Virus record (IMG/VR): IMGVR_UViG_3300044632_001003
Span: 141,010 to 205,009 of that record
Strand: one strand, 5' to 3'
DNA length: 64,000 bases
Positions 22,771-60,128 of this stretch are shown piece by piece. A program made the translations under genes and the position numbers. The notes beneath the pieces are model-generated. The model made no database searches. It was not told the DNA's origin and saw nothing but the letters and a program-made list of their open reading frames with translations. Each line of letters begins with the position of its first letter. Position 1 is the stretch's first letter.

Positions 22771-22880
22771 CAGGTAGTAAGACCATCAGGGAAATGGTGG
22801 AGATACTATGCTCCCCGCACCCTTAGCGGGGATATGAGAGACGTAATTTATACACCCATAGGTCTCGGTTAGCGGGTGTT
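22771..22880 (-). ncRNA. PhotoRC-II-like structured psbA leader
   Basis: ACCGAGACCTATGGGTG...CGTCTC, CCCCGC-TAAGGGT-GCGGGG and ACCAT-TTCCCTG-ATGGT elements upstream of a phage psbA; family name recalled, not searched. Confidence 0.7.
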
Positions 22881-22921
22881 GCAAACATTAAGGATTTGTT
22901 ACATTCTTTAACGTGTTGATG

Positions 22922-46490: not shown

Positions 46491-46499
46491 GATTCTTTT

Positions 46500-46896
46500 C
46501 AGGCTCGCCACCAATTCTTTGACTGGAAATTGGAAACCAGGCGGGAGAGAGTCCCATCCGCACCACTTGCTTTTTTATGGGAAAGCAAGAAACCAGAAGG
46601 GGTCAAATTTGACTCCACCACTTGGTTTTAAGAAACCAAGAAAAGTTGGGTTAACTTTGATATTTCGGTGATACCAAAGAATGCTATCAGAAATAGCACA
46701 TCCCAGAGTTTGAGTTTGATAGCAAAAGGAATACCGAGTAGTCCCCCAATAAACTTTATTATCAAACCATTTTTGAAATCTCCCCACAACATGATTTGAT
46801 AACCAAGTAGGAGAAGAAAGTTCCCGATATACCTCAGGATACTTGTTTTAGACATAAGGGGTTTGCTCCCGACCAGTGCTGTTATAGACCATCCGT
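46500..46896 (-). ncRNA. manA/wcaG-like cyanophage structured RNA, interrupted by an ORF
   Basis: 5' block ACGGATGGTCTATAACAGCACTGGTCGGGA; three TTTC-hairpin-TGGYG units at 46500-46645; upstream of sugar genes; family names recalled, not searched. Confidence 0.65.
46628..46855 (-). CDS. Small multi-TM membrane protein (75 aa)
   Basis: Three hydrophobic segments; P..IK.KLWD motif. Confidence 0.65.
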   Translation of the reverse strand: MSKTSILRYIGNFLLLLGYQIMLWGDFKNGLIIKFIGGLLGIPFAIKLKLWDVLFLIAFFGITEISKLTQLFLVS

Positions 46897-57581: not shown

Positions 57582-58119
57582 CTAAAGAAATTCTTTTACC
57601 ACTTTTTAATCGACGTACTCTATGTATTATATCTGAAGGGAATATGATTACGTCACCAACATCCATTGAAATTGTTTTCATATTTCTCGGACCAGACATG
57701 AGTTGAAATTCTCCACCTTCATAGTCATCCTTTGATGATAAGCAAAGAGATATGCTTAGTTTTCTTATTATACCAGGATTGTACTGTTCAGTAGTAAAAT
57801 CACTGTGCCAAGCATAATGAGAACCTTTTCCCTCATAGACTGTAAATTGAATTTGATCGTGCCAAGATGTTAAATCATAATTAAAAAGATTTAAGTTTGC
57901 ACAGTTAATAAAGTGTGCCATCATACCAGCAACCCAATGGTCTGTTGGTATCCAAAAATTTTTACTTTTTCTTATATCAGAGTCAATGGCAGATTGAGAA
58001 TCTTGAAGTCTAATCGTTGAGGATGTTAAAGATTCTTGTCCAAATTCTTTTTGTATTAGACTACAAAATTCTTTTTTAATGCCAGAAGGAATATAGTAAT
58101 AATTATTGTATATGCTCAT
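57550..58119 (-). CDS. PKHD-type 2OG-Fe(II) oxygenase
   Basis: Y.WHSD, RKLS, YEGGEF, FPS...HRV, R.SLVGW. Confidence 0.88.
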   Translation of the reverse strand: MSIYNNYYYIPSGIKKEFCSLIQKEFGQESLTSSTIRLQDSQSAIDSDIRKSKNFWIPTDHWVAGMMAHFINCANLNLFNYDLTSWHDQIQFTVYEGKGSHYAWHSDFTTEQYNPGIIRKLSISLCLSSKDDYEGGEFQLMSGPRNMKTISMDVGDVIIFPSDIIHRVRRLKSGKRISLVGWYGGPAFR

Positions 58120-58136
58120 TTTTACTACTTCGTAAG

Positions 58137-58208
58137 AGCGGAGTATCGGAATCGAACCGACGACATCTAACTTGGAAGGATAGCGTTCTACCGCTGAACT
58201 AACTCCGC
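58137..58208 (-). tRNA. tRNA-Gly(TCC)
   Basis: GCGGAGT/ACTCCGC; loop CTTCCAA; GGTTCGATTCC. Confidence 0.9.
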
Positions 58209-58210
58209 AA

Positions 58211-58287
58211 TGGTGGGGATTTACCCAGCCTCAGAGTTTCCTCTTCACAGGCACGGAACCCCAGCGCATCTTCGCTTCACACGGACT
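58211..58287 (-). ncRNA. Unannotated kink-turn-containing small RNA ending in CCA
   Basis: GCC-UGU-GA-AGAG-GAAA-CUCU-GA-GGC; outer GGGG/CCCC stem; starts at the predicted TSS of a perfect promoter. Confidence 0.55.
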
Positions 58288-58292
58288 AAAAT

Positions 58293-58321
58293 ATTATAAA
58301 GCATAATGAGTATTATGTCAA
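58293..58321 (-). promoter_or_regulatory. Perfect sigma70 promoter
   Basis: TTGACA(58316-21)-17-TATAAT(58293-98). Confidence 0.85.
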
Positions 58322-58767
58322 GCCCTTTTTTTATTTCCCCAAGTATCTGTCTGAGAGTGGCAATTTGGACATAAAAATCTTAAATTTTCTACTCGGTTGT
58401 CGTTATTTACACCATTAATATGGTCTATTTGTAGTGATATTGGATTTCCCATCCATTCAGATATACCACACTTTAAACATTCATACTTTAATATATCATC
58501 TTTCAATATTCTCTTTTTTAAATCTTTTCTATCATAAGTAGAAAATTCGCAAAAAATTTCAGAGTGAGTTTTCTTTTTGGTGCTTTTACCACCCTTCCTA
58601 AAAATAGGAAGTTTAATTCCTCTATTATCAAGGTCTTTTTTTACAATATCATAAGTAGTTCCGCTTTTATTAGTATATCCAAGTTTTTTACAAAACTGCC
58701 AAAAAGAAGAACTTTCTAAAAGAAAAGATTTTATTTCCTCATCAGAATATAAATTTTTAATAGACAT
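58318..58767 (-). CDS. HNH homing endonuclease in the tRNA cluster
   Basis: C..CGI.EW.G..I.LQIDHING...DNR.ENLRFLCPNCHSQT. Confidence 0.92.
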   Translation of the reverse strand: MSIKNLYSDEEIKSFLLESSSFWQFCKKLGYTNKSGTTYDIVKKDLDNRGIKLPIFRKGGKSTKKKTHSEIFCEFSTYDRKDLKKRILKDDILKYECLKCGISEWMGNPISLQIDHINGVNNDNRVENLRFLCPNCHSQTDTWGNKKRA

Positions 58768-58827
58768 ATAAAAAGTTTATCTATTAGTATTTATACACTT
58801 CCTTATTTAGGAAGTGTATATTGTAAG

Positions 58828-58900
58828 AGCCCCCGACAAGACTTGAACTTGCGACATCGGCTTTACAAAAGCCGCGCTCTACCAGCTGAGCTACAAGGGC
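58828..58900 (-). tRNA. tRNA-Thr(TGT)
   Basis: CGGCT-TTTGTAA-AGCCG; GTTCAAGT T-loop. Confidence 0.92.
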
Positions 58901-58990
58901 GAAACAGGGGAGGCCATCCCCCTGACCTAGAAATATTCTAGGTTTTAGTTGGAAGGAGTGCTCTTGAGGTTATCGCAGGATCACTTCCAA

Positions 58991-59062
58991 CTCCCCCTCC
59001 TGGATTCGAACCAGGGACCCTACGATTAACAGTCGTTTGCGCTACCGCTGCGCCAAGGGGGA
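58991..59062 (-). tRNA. tRNA-Asn(GTT)
   Basis: TCCCCCT/AGGGGGA; ACGA-CTGTTAA-TCGT. Confidence 0.92.
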
Positions 59063-59093
59063 ATACTAACGGGGGTGTTGCCACCCCACTATT

Positions 59094-59291
59094 TTATTTG
59101 GAACTTACAAAAGTATTGATTTTATCAGCAAGTGCTTCAACCTCTTCATATGTAGGAAACTCTGGATAATCCATTTTTACATTTCTATCCCTATTCCACA
59201 TTTCTGCAAGATTATAGTTTGCGTGAAACTCATCTTGCGCCTGACCGTAAGCTTGCTTAAAAATTTCAAAGCGCAGTTCGTAAGGTGTCAT
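59094..59291 (-). CDS. Cyanophage hypothetical protein
   Basis: MTPYELRFEIFKQA...YPEFPT...A.KIN.FVS; AAGGAG RBS; the ORF-track start lies inside tRNA-Leu and was moved. Confidence 0.7.
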   Translation of the reverse strand: MTPYELRFEIFKQAYGQAQDEFHANYNLAEMWNRDRNVKMDYPEFPTYEEVEALADKINTFVSSK

Positions 59292-59340
59292 TGTTTTACT
59301 CCTTGTGTGTTTGTGTGTGTATGGAGAATAAAATCTCCAA

Positions 59341-59420
59341 TGCCCGAGAGAGGACTCGAACCTCCACTCCGAAGAACATGATCCTAAGTCATGCGTGGCT
59401 ACCAATTACACCACTCGGGC
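59341..59420 (-). tRNA. tRNA-Leu(TAG)
   Basis: GCCCGAG/CTCGGGC; CATGA-CTTAGGA-TCATG; variable arm. Confidence 0.93.
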
Positions 59421-59497
<77 letters not shown>

Positions 59498-59581
59498 AAG
59501 AGACCTCCCATCTTTATCGACCCAGTGGGCAAGGAGGGGCAGGTCTTATACGGAGTTTGAACCCCCGCCGCCTATGAGACA

Positions 59582-59610
59582 ATCATACCAGATACGGTGC
59601 GAATCGTCAA
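59582..59610 (-). promoter_or_regulatory. Sigma70 promoter of the tRNA operon
   Basis: TTGACG-17-TATGAT with extended TGn. Confidence 0.8.
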
Positions 59611-60128
59611 GATCCAAAAATTTGAATCGAAATTCTTGGTTCTGGTAAATAATTTGAGACTAATGTTACGACATGACCTTCATGAATATCATTCAAAACT
59701 AAAGACCTACATTCTGGAACTAGGGCTTTCATGATAGAACTACCATCCTCTTGCTCTTCTTGCCACACAAATAATCCACCATGATTAATATGCCATTCTT
59801 TGTTTAAGTATATAGTTGCACCAAATTTATGATTAGAATCATCATGAAGTGCGATACCACCGTTAGGTAGCGTTACATGATAATTCATGGATATTTTATT
59901 ACAATAGGGTAAAATATCTTTAATTTCTTCGAGTATTTCTAATCTCAATTCTGGATTTACTTTTCTGAATAGACAGTTTCCAGAAATACCCAGTGTTGCA
60001 TACCTTGGCCAAGCAAAGGTACTAACTTTCCAACTATCGGAGAGATTGGAATTAACATCATCAAGACATTTTTTCCACAAATCTAAACTAATACTATCTT
60101 TAAATACTTTCATTTGAACAATTTTCAA
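59607..60128 (-). CDS. 2OG-Fe(II) oxygenase (prolyl-4-hydroxylase-like)
   Basis: I.LHDD, ATIYLN.EW....GGLF, H.V, R.SIQIF. Confidence 0.8.
   Translation of the reverse strand: MKIVQMKVFKDSISLDLWKKCLDDVNSNLSDSWKVSTFAWPRYATLGISGNCLFRKVNPELRLEILEEIKDILPYCNKISMNYHVTLPNGGIALHDDSNHKFGATIYLNKEWHINHGGLFVWQEEQEDGSSIMKALVPECRSLVLNDIHEGHVVTLVSNYLPEPRISIQIFGS

What the first reader, a model, noticed from the sequence alone, without database searches (positions are those of the whole stretch)
58211..58287. Undescribed kink-turn small RNA with a 3' CCA, co-transcribed with tRNA-Gly
Seen: a GC-rich 77-nt element starts at the predicted TSS of a perfect TTGACA-17-TATAAT promoter and ends CCCCACCA, 2 nt before tRNA-Gly. 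It contains GCC-UGU-GA-AGAG-GAAA-CUCU-GA-GGC: a C-stem, 3-nt bulge, tandem G.A/A.G pairs and a GNRA-capped stem, which fits the standard k-turn consensus. An outer GGGG/CCCC stem closes it. It has no anticodon arm or T-arm. Inference: RNase P processing of tRNA-Gly would release it as a discrete RNA, perhaps a tRNA-end mimic, a decoy, or a ligand for k-turn-binding proteins.
Basis: partly seen in the sequence, partly recalled or inferred. Interest (0 to 1): 0.7.

Follow-up and report, generated by a model that had tools for sequence, protein, structure and literature searches.

The report
Conserved k-turn RNA module before phage tRNAs
The element is real: it is a 50-base folded RNA cassette with a kink-turn-type hairpin that freshwater cyanophages place just upstream of a tRNA gene, it is more conserved than that tRNA and matches no described RNA family, but its "CCA end" is a coincidence and its function is still only inferred.

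Summary
A 12/12 TTGACA-17-TATAAT promoter is followed by a 77-nt leader that ends CCCCACCA 2 nt before tRNA-Gly(UCC).

The k-turn sequence pattern alone is not above chance: 27 loose matches in the window against 17±5 in shuffles. Comparative data make it real.
- The 50-nt core occurs in about 150 viral and metagenomic loci, as 41 sequence variants.
- 98.9% of cells pair, and five base pairs show compensatory changes.
- The tandem G·A/A·G is invariant, also in the set collected by promoter alone. Non-canonical pairs occur almost only at k-turn position 3b·3n.
- The core is 94% identical between phages whose tRNA-Gly is only 80% identical.

The core is a portable cassette, usually ending 3–9 nt before a tRNA: Gly, Met or Leu.
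- Relatives have a plain hairpin or a cloverleaf-like RNA in the same place.
- Phage S-CREM1 has the AbiF antitoxin RNA motif there.

The 3' CCA is not conserved. No Rfam family and no paper found describes the element.

Best reading: RNase P and tRNA 3' processing release it as a small RNA that binds a protein. This is inferred, not shown.

The parts
58316..58321 (-). -35 hexamer TTGACA of the tRNA-Gly promoter. The TGA stop of the upstream HNH gene overlaps it.
   Evidence: It is conserved in more than 110 related contigs.
58293..58298 (-). -10 hexamer TATAAT, 17 nt from the -35 box.
   Evidence: 12 of 12 matches. Relatives mostly have TATACT.
58302..58317 (-). Inverted repeat CATAAT-ACTC-ATTATG inside the promoter spacer. 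In relatives it is an 8-bp hairpin, GACAUAAU/AUUAUGUC.
   Evidence: many compensatory variants (GACGAAA/TTTCGTC, GACAGAA/TTCTGTC, GACAATCT/AGATTGTC) and G·U-type variants, which point to an RNA-level hairpin.
58264..58287 (-). Variable 5' leader, from the predicted start (A58287/G58286) to the cassette. It carries the family motif (GUCC)GUGUGAAG..AAG..GC.
   Evidence: It is 77% identical pairwise among relatives. It is absent where the cassette lies between two tRNAs.
58214..58263 (-). Conserved 50-nt RNA cassette ('class B'): a closing stem, two internal loops and a k-turn-type hairpin.
   Evidence: Alignments A1 and A2 with pair counts. The covariance model R1 finds one copy in the 205-kb phage genome.
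58259..58263 (-). 5' arm of the closing stem, UGGGG. It pairs with 58214-58218.
   Evidence: pairs UA/GC (16/21), GC/AU (36/2) and GC/AU/GU (21/14/4), so three compensatory pairs.
58214..58218 (-). 3' arm of the closing stem, CCCCA.
58250..58252 (-). k-turn C-stem, 5' strand GCC. It pairs with GGC at 58228-58230. Below it lie CC/GG (58255-58256 with 58224-58225) and an invariant GU/UG 2x2 loop.
   Evidence: invariant except G-C to G·U in 2 variants.
58247..58249 (-). Three-nucleotide bulge UGU (L1-L3). Some relatives have UAU.
58245..58246 (-). G(1b) and A(2b) of the tandem sheared pairs.
   Evidence: Invariant in all variants, including the 32 loci collected by promoter sequence alone.
58231..58232 (-). 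G(2n) and A(1n) of the tandem sheared pairs.
   Evidence: Invariant.
58233..58244 (-). NC stem AGAG/CUCU capped by a GAAA tetraloop (58237-58240).
   Evidence: two compensatory pairs. Stem variants are AGAG/CUCU, AGG/CCU, AGA/UCU and AGGA/UCCU. The 3b·3n position is A-U in 34 variants, A·A in 2, U·U in 2 and G·U in 1.
58209..58213 (-). Single-stranded tail CCAUU between the cassette and the RNase P site of tRNA-Gly.
   Evidence: The tail is usually 3-9 nt long, its sequence is not conserved, and U is common at -1.
58136..58208 (-). tRNA-Gly(UCC), whose 5' maturation would define the 3' end of the leader RNA.
58318..58767 (-). HNH homing-endonuclease gene inserted between tRNA-Thr and the promoter. 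In relatives the promoter abuts the tRNA-Thr 3' end.

Best explanation
The 77 nt are the 5' leader of a phage tRNA-Gly transcription unit in a freshwater T4-like cyanophage related to S-SRM01.

Behind a strong sigma-70-type promoter and a short variable leader sits a self-contained 50-nt RNA cassette. From the base upwards it consists of:
- a 5-bp closing stem;
- an asymmetric UU/UAAAU internal loop;
- a CC/GG step and a GU/UG loop;
- a standard-sequence k-turn: GCC/GGC C-stem, 3-nt bulge and tandem G·A/A·G;
- a 3-4-bp stem capped by GAAA.

The cassette ends a few nucleotides before a tRNA 5' end. RNase P cleavage of the tRNA therefore creates its 3' end. Where it lies between two tRNAs, 3' maturation of the upstream tRNA creates its 5' end.

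The released RNA would be about 75 nt here and about 52 nt between tRNAs. It most likely acts by binding a protein, for two reasons. Its loops are sequence-invariant. Its k-turn has a Watson-Crick 3b·3n pair, the type that does not fold in metal ions alone.

Shown: sequence, conservation, secondary structure, modular placement.
Inferred: transcription start, RNase P release, stability, k-turn geometry, protein partner.
For: Homologues:
- The promoter word occurs exactly in 111 viral contigs.
- Almost all of them read tRNA-Thr, promoter, leader, variable hairpin, tRNA-Gly.
- Among these loci, 53 have a plain hairpin, 32 have this cassette and 17 have a cloverleaf-like RNA.
- Pattern scans bring the total to 151 cassette loci with 41 distinct sequences.

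Structure:
- 98.9% of cells pair, against 91.1% in shuffles and 64% or less when partners are slid.
- Five pairs show compensatory changes.
- G·U variants fit only the minus strand.
- GA/GA is invariant.
- All four non-standard cells in the NC stem (A·A, U·U), plus one G·U, sit at 3b·3n.

Selection: in the set anchored on the promoter, the cassette is 94% identical, the adjacent tRNA-Gly 80% and the 5' leader 77%.

Portability:
- 112 loci: promoter, cassette, tRNA-Gly.
- 19 loci: tRNA-Ile(UAU), cassette, tRNA-Met(CAU).
- 3 loci: promoter, cassette, tRNA-Leu(UAA).
- The cassette ends 3-9 nt before the tRNA in 129 of 138 loci.

Same slot, other RNAs:
- S-CREM1 has the Rfam abiF motif 4 nt before its homologous tRNA-Gly.
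- The abiF motif lies 5 nt before tRNA-Arg in S-SRM01, and at the same kind of position before tRNA-Arg in 18 loci in all.
- That RNA neutralises the AbiF toxin in trans (PMC12373285).
- The phages searched have no Abi_2 gene.

k-turn type: a Watson-Crick 3b·3n pair prevents folding in ions alone (PMC4382518).

RNA libraries: lake metatranscriptomes contain contigs with the cassette.
Against: - There is no direct evidence for a stable RNA. The metatranscriptome contigs are low depth (2-9) and come from relatives. One runs upstream into the -10 box, so DNA carry-over or read-through cannot be excluded.
- About half of the related phages manage with a plain hairpin in this slot. GC-rich hairpins also precede tRNA-Thr, tRNA-Asn and tRNA-Arg in the window. 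A generic cis role would fit both facts.
- No L7Ae-family protein is encoded by the phage, and no partner is known.
- The NC stem varies between 3 and 4 bp, which argues against a precise tetraloop docking.
- The k-turn pattern by itself is common by chance.
- Part of the invariance in alignment A2 is imposed by the search patterns used.
Confidence: 0.5

Rival explanations
1. The element acts only in cis. A leader hairpin at a fixed distance from the tRNA would insulate tRNA folding, set RNase P or RNase E access, or protect the precursor's 5' end. The k-turn cassette would be just one lineage's elaboration of that hairpin, with no function after cleavage.
For: - The distance to the tRNA is nearly fixed, usually 3-9 nt.
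- 53 of 112 related loci have only a plain hairpin with the same stem base and an A-rich 3' loop side.
- Model R1 aligns the cassette's base with such hairpins.
- GC-rich hairpins also end 3-8 nt before tRNA-Thr, tRNA-Asn and tRNA-Arg in the window.
- U at -1 suits bacterial RNase P (own knowledge).
Against: - A spacer or insulator does not need invariant loops, or a sequence more conserved than the tRNA itself.
- The slot also holds the abiF antitoxin motif, which has a demonstrated trans activity.
- The cassette moves between unrelated tRNAs as a unit.
Confidence: 0.28
2. The element is a selfish or neutral passenger. The insert would be a partial duplication or mobile cassette spread by recombination or gene conversion around the homing-endonuclease hotspot in the tRNA cluster. 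Its high identity would then reflect recent spread rather than function.
For: - HNH genes sit at this exact locus, before the promoter in the window and after it in L037, L038, L084 and L108.
- The same cassette is found mosaically beside different tRNA-Gly alleles.
- The cassette's 5' strand (UCCGUG..UGAAGG) resembles the 5' leader motif.
Against: - 41 variants keep the fold through compensatory changes while the loops stay fixed. That is the signature of purifying selection on an RNA.
- The cassette occurs in three different tRNA contexts and in many lakes and estuaries.
Confidence: 0.1
3. One reading: a tRNA-end mimic whose 3' ACCA is presented like an acceptor end, for example as a decoy for CCA-recognising enzymes.
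For: - The window and its closest relatives end CCCCACCA(UU).
- The closing stem plus inner helix spans about 12 stacked layers, similar in length to an acceptor/T arm (inference).
Against: - The tail is CCAUU in 22 of 32 cassette loci anchored on the promoter, but ACAUU, CACCU, CACUU, AUUC, GUUU and UUUU elsewhere.
- The A is base-paired with U58263, and that pair covaries to G-C.
- Two further nucleotides follow before the RNase P site.
- There is no T-loop and no tRNA-model hit.
Confidence: 0.04

Closest known systems
Hairpin k-turns of the U4 snRNA 5' stem-loop and box C/D type
   Same: The layout is the same: a G/C C-stem (GCC/GGC), a 3-nt bulge, tandem G·A/A·G, a short NC stem and a loop. 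L3 is U. The 3b·3n pair is Watson-Crick or U·U, the class that needs a protein to fold (PMC4382518, PMC5689011). The 3' strand reads CUGA, like a D box.
   Different: The host is a bacteriophage of cyanobacteria. There are no guide regions. The Rfam C/D model sR9 scores only 16.6 bits, E = 1.7. The phage has no L7Ae, Snu13 or Nop homologue. The hairpin is embedded in a longer rod with invariant internal loops.
abiF RNA motif (Rfam RF03085), the RNA antitoxin of AbiF/Abi_2 HEPN toxins
   Same: It occupies the equivalent position in related cyanophages, 4-5 nt before a tRNA: tRNA-Gly in S-CREM1 and tRNA-Arg in S-SRM01. It is also a closing stem with a small 5' bulge, an apical stem-loop and an A-rich 3' internal loop (CAAAUC versus UAAAU).
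   Different: There is no detectable sequence or model similarity. RF03085 gives no hit at E<=10 on the window region or anywhere in the phage genome. The abiF motif has no k-turn.
Phage T4 small RNAs RNAC and RNAD from the tRNA gene region
   Same: They are small non-tRNA RNAs transcribed within a T4-like phage tRNA cluster, and their roles are unknown (PMC3014915).
   Different: No sequence relation was tested, since the T4 sequences were not in hand. They have a different size and host.
Functional RNAs made from tRNA precursors (E. coli 3'ETS-leuZ sponge; MALAT1/mascRNA, where RNase P makes the upstream RNA's 3' end)
   Same: An RNA that is not a tRNA gets its ends from tRNA-processing enzymes and then acts in trans. 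This comparison rests on my own knowledge and was not checked here.
   Different: Those RNAs work by base pairing or as long nuclear RNAs. Here a compact, protein-type structured cassette sits 5' of the tRNA.
Phage-encoded antitoxin or repeat mimics (pseudo-ToxI of phage phiTE; RNA anti-CRISPRs)
   Same: These are phage small structured RNAs that titrate a host defence protein. This comparison rests on my own knowledge. It is the analogy behind the most novel reading.
   Different: No host RNA or defence system that the cassette could mimic was found. The pattern scan of 185,579 prokaryote genomes gave only 2 chance hits in coding DNA.

Membership tests
Standard (simple) kink-turn | A three-nucleotide bulge flanked on its 5' side by a canonical C helix | tested here: met
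   GCC/GGC with a UGU (or UAU) bulge. The C-stem pairs are invariant or G-C to G·U in 39 variants.
Standard (simple) kink-turn | Tandem G·A and A·G directly after the bulge (1b·1n, 2b·2n), conserved | tested here: met
   G, A / G, A are invariant in all variants, including the 32 loci collected without reference to the hairpin. The sheared geometry itself cannot be seen from sequence.
Standard (simple) kink-turn | The NC helix continues after the G·A pairs, and 3b·3n tolerates non-Watson-Crick pairs | tested here: met
   Two covarying NC pairs. 3b·3n is A-U in 34 variants, G·U in 1, A·A in 2 and U·U in 2. This is the only NC-stem position with non-standard cells.
Standard (simple) kink-turn | Kinked three-dimensional geometry with cross-strand A-minor contacts | not testable with these tools
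   It needs FRET, gel mobility, probing or a solved structure.
Standard (simple) kink-turn | Binding by an L7Ae-family protein | not testable with these tools
   The complex job with A. fulgidus L7Ae was not folded. The phage genome has no PF01248 gene.
tRNA or tRNA-like acceptor mimic | A cloverleaf or T-arm recognisable by tRNA models | tested here: not met
   There is no ARAGORN call and no RF00005 hit at E<=10 on the element.
tRNA or tRNA-like acceptor mimic | A conserved single-stranded 3' NCCA | tested here: not met
   The tail sequence varies. The A is paired and covaries.
abiF RNA motif (RF03085) | A score at or above the 37-bit gathering threshold of the covariance model | tested here: not met
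   No hit at E<=10 in 57900-58600, in 58780-59660 or in the whole 205-kb genome. Relatives score 48-54 bits at the equivalent slot.
Box C/D sRNA | C (RUGAUGA) and D (CUGA) boxes with guide regions, and a family model score | tested here: not met
   The best hit, sR9, scores 16.6 bits against a gathering score of 36, E = 1.7. UGUGAAG is not a C box.
Intrinsic terminator or attenuator | A GC-rich hairpin followed directly by a U tract | tested here: not met
   The tail is CCAUU and the tRNA follows. The terminator scan lists nothing here.

The most novel reading that the evidence does not exclude
Cyanophage tRNA clusters serve as production lines for small counter-defence RNAs. Structured cassettes are parked a few nucleotides upstream of tRNAs, so that the host's own RNase P and tRNA 3' processing cut them out in large amounts early in infection. 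One occupant is an orphan AbiF antitoxin motif. The k-turn cassette in this window, and the cloverleaf-like cassette in relatives, would be further decoys that sequester still unknown host RNA-binding defence or regulatory proteins.
Probability: 0.15. Interest if true: 0.85.

Novelty: new variant of a known kind. Interest (0 to 1): 0.6.

Why it matters
If the cassette is released and binds a protein, it would be a new family of phage small RNA built around a protein-dependent k-turn. It would come from a group of organisms, cyanobacteria and their phages, where no k-turn-binding protein is known.

The wider pattern may matter more. Interchangeable structured RNAs occupy a fixed slot just upstream of phage tRNAs:
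- a plain hairpin;
- the k-turn cassette;
- a cloverleaf-like RNA;
- the AbiF antitoxin motif.

In relatives, wcaG RNA lies in or just ahead of tRNA leaders and manA RNA lies between two tRNAs. This points to tRNA processing as a general way for phages to make small RNAs.

It also gives a testable idea of why phages keep tRNA clusters: as platforms for anti-defence RNAs as well as for translation. Finally, it offers about 150 natural variants for studying k-turn sequence rules.

Tried and rejected
- **Rfam.** The whole window at gathering thresholds, and the locus at E<=10, gave only tRNA plus noise (sR9 at E = 1.7). The cloverleaf-like relative (class C) is not a tRNA or any other family. The plain-hairpin relative has no sub-threshold abiF hit.
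- **BLAST of the leader against 50,697 phage records.** Only S-SRM01 shares the promoter and leader. No cultured phage has the cassette.
- **Pattern scan of 185,579 prokaryote genomes.** It gave two matches, both in coding DNA with no closing stem and no tRNA, so they are chance.
- **Covariance model R1 over 84 related loci without the cassette.** It found only plain GC hairpins, E = 0.5-0.8.
- **Complex prediction of the RNA with A. fulgidus L7Ae.** The job was not folded and gives no evidence either way.
- **RNA-run contigs.** Present but low depth and from relatives, so they settle neither the start site nor stability.
- **Codon-anticodon idea.** I considered that GGA in the leader motif pairs with the UCC anticodon. 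I rejected it because GGA is not conserved: the window has AAGCGAAG and others have AAGUGAAG.
- **Ribozyme idea.** I considered hammerhead or another self-cleaving ribozyme. The core motifs are absent and there is no Rfam hit.
- **Small ORFs in the tRNA cluster** (window 59291-59094; S-CREM1 'pre-mRNA-splicing factor', which is DUF7219). Neither is an RNA-binding family.
- **Literature searches** for a description of the element found nothing.

Full report
**What is at the locus**

The finding lies on the minus strand. Read 5' to 3' on that strand:
- an HNH endonuclease ORF (58767-58318) ends with a TGA that overlaps a -35 box;
- TTGACA (58321-58316), a 17-nt spacer and TATAAT (58298-58293) form the only 12/12 promoter match in the region;
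- a purine start is expected at 58287 or 58286;
- the leader runs to 58209;
- tRNA-Gly(UCC) occupies 58208-58136.

Taken alone, however, it is not statistically remarkable. A loose k-turn sequence pattern occurs 27 times in the window against 17±5 in dinucleotide shuffles. The fold energy of the leader is ordinary, with z = -0.6 to -1.3.

The window is the end of a 205-kb, 96%-complete viral record. Its DNA is held by lake and freshwater metagenomes. Its nearest cultured relative is the freshwater Synechococcus myovirus S-SRM01.

**Homologues**

The 20-nt promoter word TTGACATAATACTCATTATG occurs exactly in 111 IMG/VR contigs. Nearly all have the same layout: tRNA-Thr(UGU), the promoter starting at or within 2 nt of the tRNA's last base, a purine-rich leader with the motif (GUCC)GUGUGAAG..AAGUGC, a hairpin, 4-6 nt, and tRNA-Gly(UCC).

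The hairpin comes in three forms that share the base of the stem:
- class A, a plain hairpin such as GGGAG-AGAAAU-CUCCC, in 53 loci including S-SRM01;
- class B, the window's element, in 32 loci;
- class C, a 75-nt four-way junction that folds like a cloverleaf, in 17 loci. Its fold has z = -3.85, but no tRNA model recognises it.

Further pattern scans of viral and metagenomic contigs raised class B to 151 loci with 41 distinct sequences. A scan of 185,579 prokaryote genomes gave only two chance matches inside coding DNA. The cassette occurs once in this phage's genome.

**Structure**

On 39 distinct variants, the structure I propose keeps 98.9% of cells paired. Shuffles give 91.1%, and sliding the partners gives 64% or less (the smaller set is).

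The proposed structure, from the base upwards, is:
- a 5-bp closing stem;
- a UU/UAAAU internal loop;
- CC/GG;
- a GU/UG loop;
- a GCC/GGC stem;
- a UGU bulge;
- GA opposite GA;
- a 3-4-bp stem;
- a GAAA loop.

Five pairs show compensatory changes, three in the closing stem (U-A to G-C, G-C to A-U) and two in the apical stem (AGAG/CUCU, AGG/CCU, AGA/UCU, AGGA/UCCU). G·U variants are compatible only with the minus strand.

The middle helix and all loop nucleotides are invariant. Part of that invariance is imposed by my search patterns. However, the 32 class B loci collected by promoter alone show the same invariance. In that unbiased set the cassette is 94% identical pairwise, the adjacent tRNA-Gly 80% and the 5' leader 77%. 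An RNA more conserved than the tRNA beside it, with changes confined to compensating stem positions, is under selection as an RNA.

**Is it a k-turn?**

At the sequence level every defining feature is met:
- a canonical G/C C-stem;
- a 3-nt bulge with L3 = U;
- invariant G·A and A·G;
- a continuing NC stem.

All four non-standard cells in the NC stem (A·A twice, U·U twice), plus one G·U, fall at the 3b·3n position. That is where k-turns, unlike ordinary helices, tolerate them.

The usual 3b·3n pair is Watson-Crick A-U. According to McPhee et al. (PMC4382518), such k-turns do not fold in metal ions alone and need a protein or a tertiary contact. The architecture is that of the U4 5' stem-loop or a box C/D hairpin.

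The three-dimensional kink and protein binding could not be tested. The complex job with L7Ae was not folded. The phage encodes no L7Ae-family protein. I therefore call it a k-turn-type hairpin of the protein-dependent class, with geometry unproven.

**The CCA and the tRNA-mimic idea**

The tail between the closing stem and the tRNA is CCAUU in the window's clade. Elsewhere it is ACAUU, CACCU, CACUU, AUUC, GUUU or UUUU. The A of 'ACCA' pairs with U58263, and this pair covaries to G-C. The CCA is therefore a lineage-specific coincidence. There is no T-arm and no anticodon arm.

**Context: a slot before tRNAs**

The cassette is portable:
- promoter, leader, cassette, tRNA-Gly(UCC) in 112 loci;
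- tRNA-Ile(UAU), cassette, tRNA-Met(CAU) in 19 loci, with no promoter and no 5' leader. In L125 the cassette fills the whole 54-nt spacer;
- promoter, leader, cassette, tRNA-Leu(UAA) in 3 loci.

The cassette ends 3-9 nt before the tRNA in 129 of 138 loci.

The same slot holds other RNAs:
- In the estuarine cyanophage S-CREM1, the homologous tRNA-Gly is preceded at 4 nt by the Rfam abiF motif (PMC9964418).
- In S-SRM01 the abiF motif lies 5 nt before tRNA-Arg(UCU). In the loci I hold, it precedes tRNA-Arg(UCU) 18 times and tRNA-Ile(UAU) 4 times.

The abiF RNA is the antitoxin that binds and neutralises the AbiF HEPN toxin, including in trans (PMC12373285). Neither S-SRM01, S-CREM1, this phage nor two further relatives encodes an Abi_2 protein, so the phage copies are orphan antitoxin motifs.

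The window's own tRNA-Arg leader (about 59575-59498) has the same two-hairpin layout, but the abiF apex is replaced and no model hit remains.

In marine relatives, wcaG RNA lies directly before the tRNA-Gly hairpin (S-CAM3, S-H9-1). In S-CREM1, manA RNA lies between two tRNAs.

**How it most likely works**

- Shown: a conserved promoter, a conserved structured cassette, and a nearly fixed short distance to a tRNA 5' end.
- Established knowledge: RNase P cuts every pre-tRNA at +1, so the upstream piece is necessarily released with a 3'-OH at U58209. Between two tRNAs, 3' maturation of the upstream tRNA frees the other end.
- Inferred: the released RNA persists and acts through a protein. It would be about 75 nt here, with a 5' triphosphate and a stable hairpin near its 3' end. 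The invariant loops and the protein-dependent k-turn point to a protein partner.

By analogy with the abiF occupant, a counter-defence decoy is the most interesting specific version, but nothing ties this cassette to a defence system.

The main rival is a purely cis role in precursor folding or processing. It is supported by the plain hairpins in half of the relatives and by similar hairpins before tRNA-Thr, tRNA-Asn and tRNA-Arg in the window. It does not explain the sequence invariance.

Metatranscriptome contigs from lakes contain the cassette. They are shallow and come from relatives, and one extends upstream of the predicted start. They therefore do not settle transcription or stability.

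**Novelty**

No Rfam family matches. No cultured phage carries the cassette. Literature searches found no description.

Known neighbours in concept are:
- T4's RNAC and RNAD from the tRNA region, whose function is unknown (PMC3014915);
- tRNA-spacer-derived sRNAs;
- phage antitoxin mimics.

I rate it a new variant of known kinds (a k-turn hairpin, and a small RNA derived from a tRNA cluster), with a potentially new principle in the modular slot.

Noticed in passing
window 58302-58321 (-), and the same place in L005-L115 and L117-L212: The promoter spacer contains an 8-bp inverted repeat that runs from the -35 box to just before the -10 box (GACAUAAU-ACUC-AUUAUGUC). It is kept through many compensatory variants (GACGAAA/TTTCGTC, GACAGAA/TTCTGTC, GACAATCT/AGATTGTC) and through G·U-type variants, which suggests an RNA hairpin. 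It directly follows tRNA-Thr and is followed by a U-rich stretch that includes the -10 box. It may be a tRNA-Thr trailer or terminator hairpin nested inside the next promoter.
   Followed up: partly
window 58318-58767 (-); L037, L038, L084, L108: An HNH homing-endonuclease gene is inserted between tRNA-Thr and the promoter, which abut in relatives. In other contigs a different HNH gene sits just after the same promoter. This recalls segB in the T4 tRNA cluster (own knowledge). The locus looks like a homing hotspot.
   Followed up: partly
window about 59498-59610 (-); L001:951-987; L213:1164-1200; L007:3825-3861; L095:3101-3137: A second promoter (TTGACG-17-TATGAT, 59610-59582) drives a two-hairpin leader before tRNA-Arg(UCU). 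In S-SRM01 and many contigs the second hairpin is a bona fide abiF antitoxin motif (48-54 bits), although the phages searched lack an Abi_2 gene. In this window the apex is replaced and no abiF hit remains.
   Followed up: partly
L016:2389-2467(-), L024:10123-10201(+) and 15 other loci: Class C occupies the same slot. It is a highly conserved 75-nt four-way junction with an 8-bp 'acceptor' stem, three hairpins and a truncated 'anticodon' arm (z = -3.85). No Rfam model recognises it, including the tRNA model. It is another undescribed RNA.
   Followed up: partly
window 58905-58924 (-), 59072-59087 (-): GC-rich hairpins end 4 nt before tRNA-Thr and 8 nt before tRNA-Asn. The isolated tRNA-Val, tRNA-Ser and tRNA-Pro genes (53183, 51606, 48165) have none.
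   Followed up: partly
L002:1389-1486, L004:1326-1420, L213:378-475 and 848-1062: In marine and estuarine cyanophages, wcaG RNA lies directly before the hairpin and tRNA-Gly (S-CAM3, S-H9-1) or 47 nt before tRNA-Met (S-CREM1). manA RNA is sandwiched between tRNA-Leu and tRNA-Asn with gaps of 0-1 nt. Known 'cis-regulatory' motifs therefore also sit in tRNA-flanked positions.
   Followed up: no
L007:3892-4086, L029:4978-5172(-): A group I intron (64.6 bits) lies just after the start of the tRNA-Arg gene that follows the abiF motif. ARAGORN does not call that tRNA.
   Followed up: no
window 58283-58270 versus 58256-58241 (-): The 5' leader motif (UCCGUG-UGAAG) resembles the 5' strand of the cassette (UCCGUGCC-UGUGAAG). 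This could be a partial duplication or a shared protein-binding site.
   Followed up: no
window 59094-59291 (-): A 65-aa ORF with a good Shine-Dalgarno-like AAGGAG lies between tRNA-Leu and tRNA-Asn. It matches no Pfam or PHROG family.
   Followed up: partly
window 46497-46597 (-), 22798-22891 (-): A wcaG RNA (100.7 bits) and a PhotoRC-II RNA (79.5 bits) are present, which is typical of cyanomyoviruses.
   Followed up: no
RNA runs X31 and X33: Metatranscriptome contigs show the cassette followed by more than 230 nt of AT-rich sequence instead of a tRNA. This context is rare or absent in the DNA collections. One metagenome locus also had no tRNA downstream.
   Followed up: no
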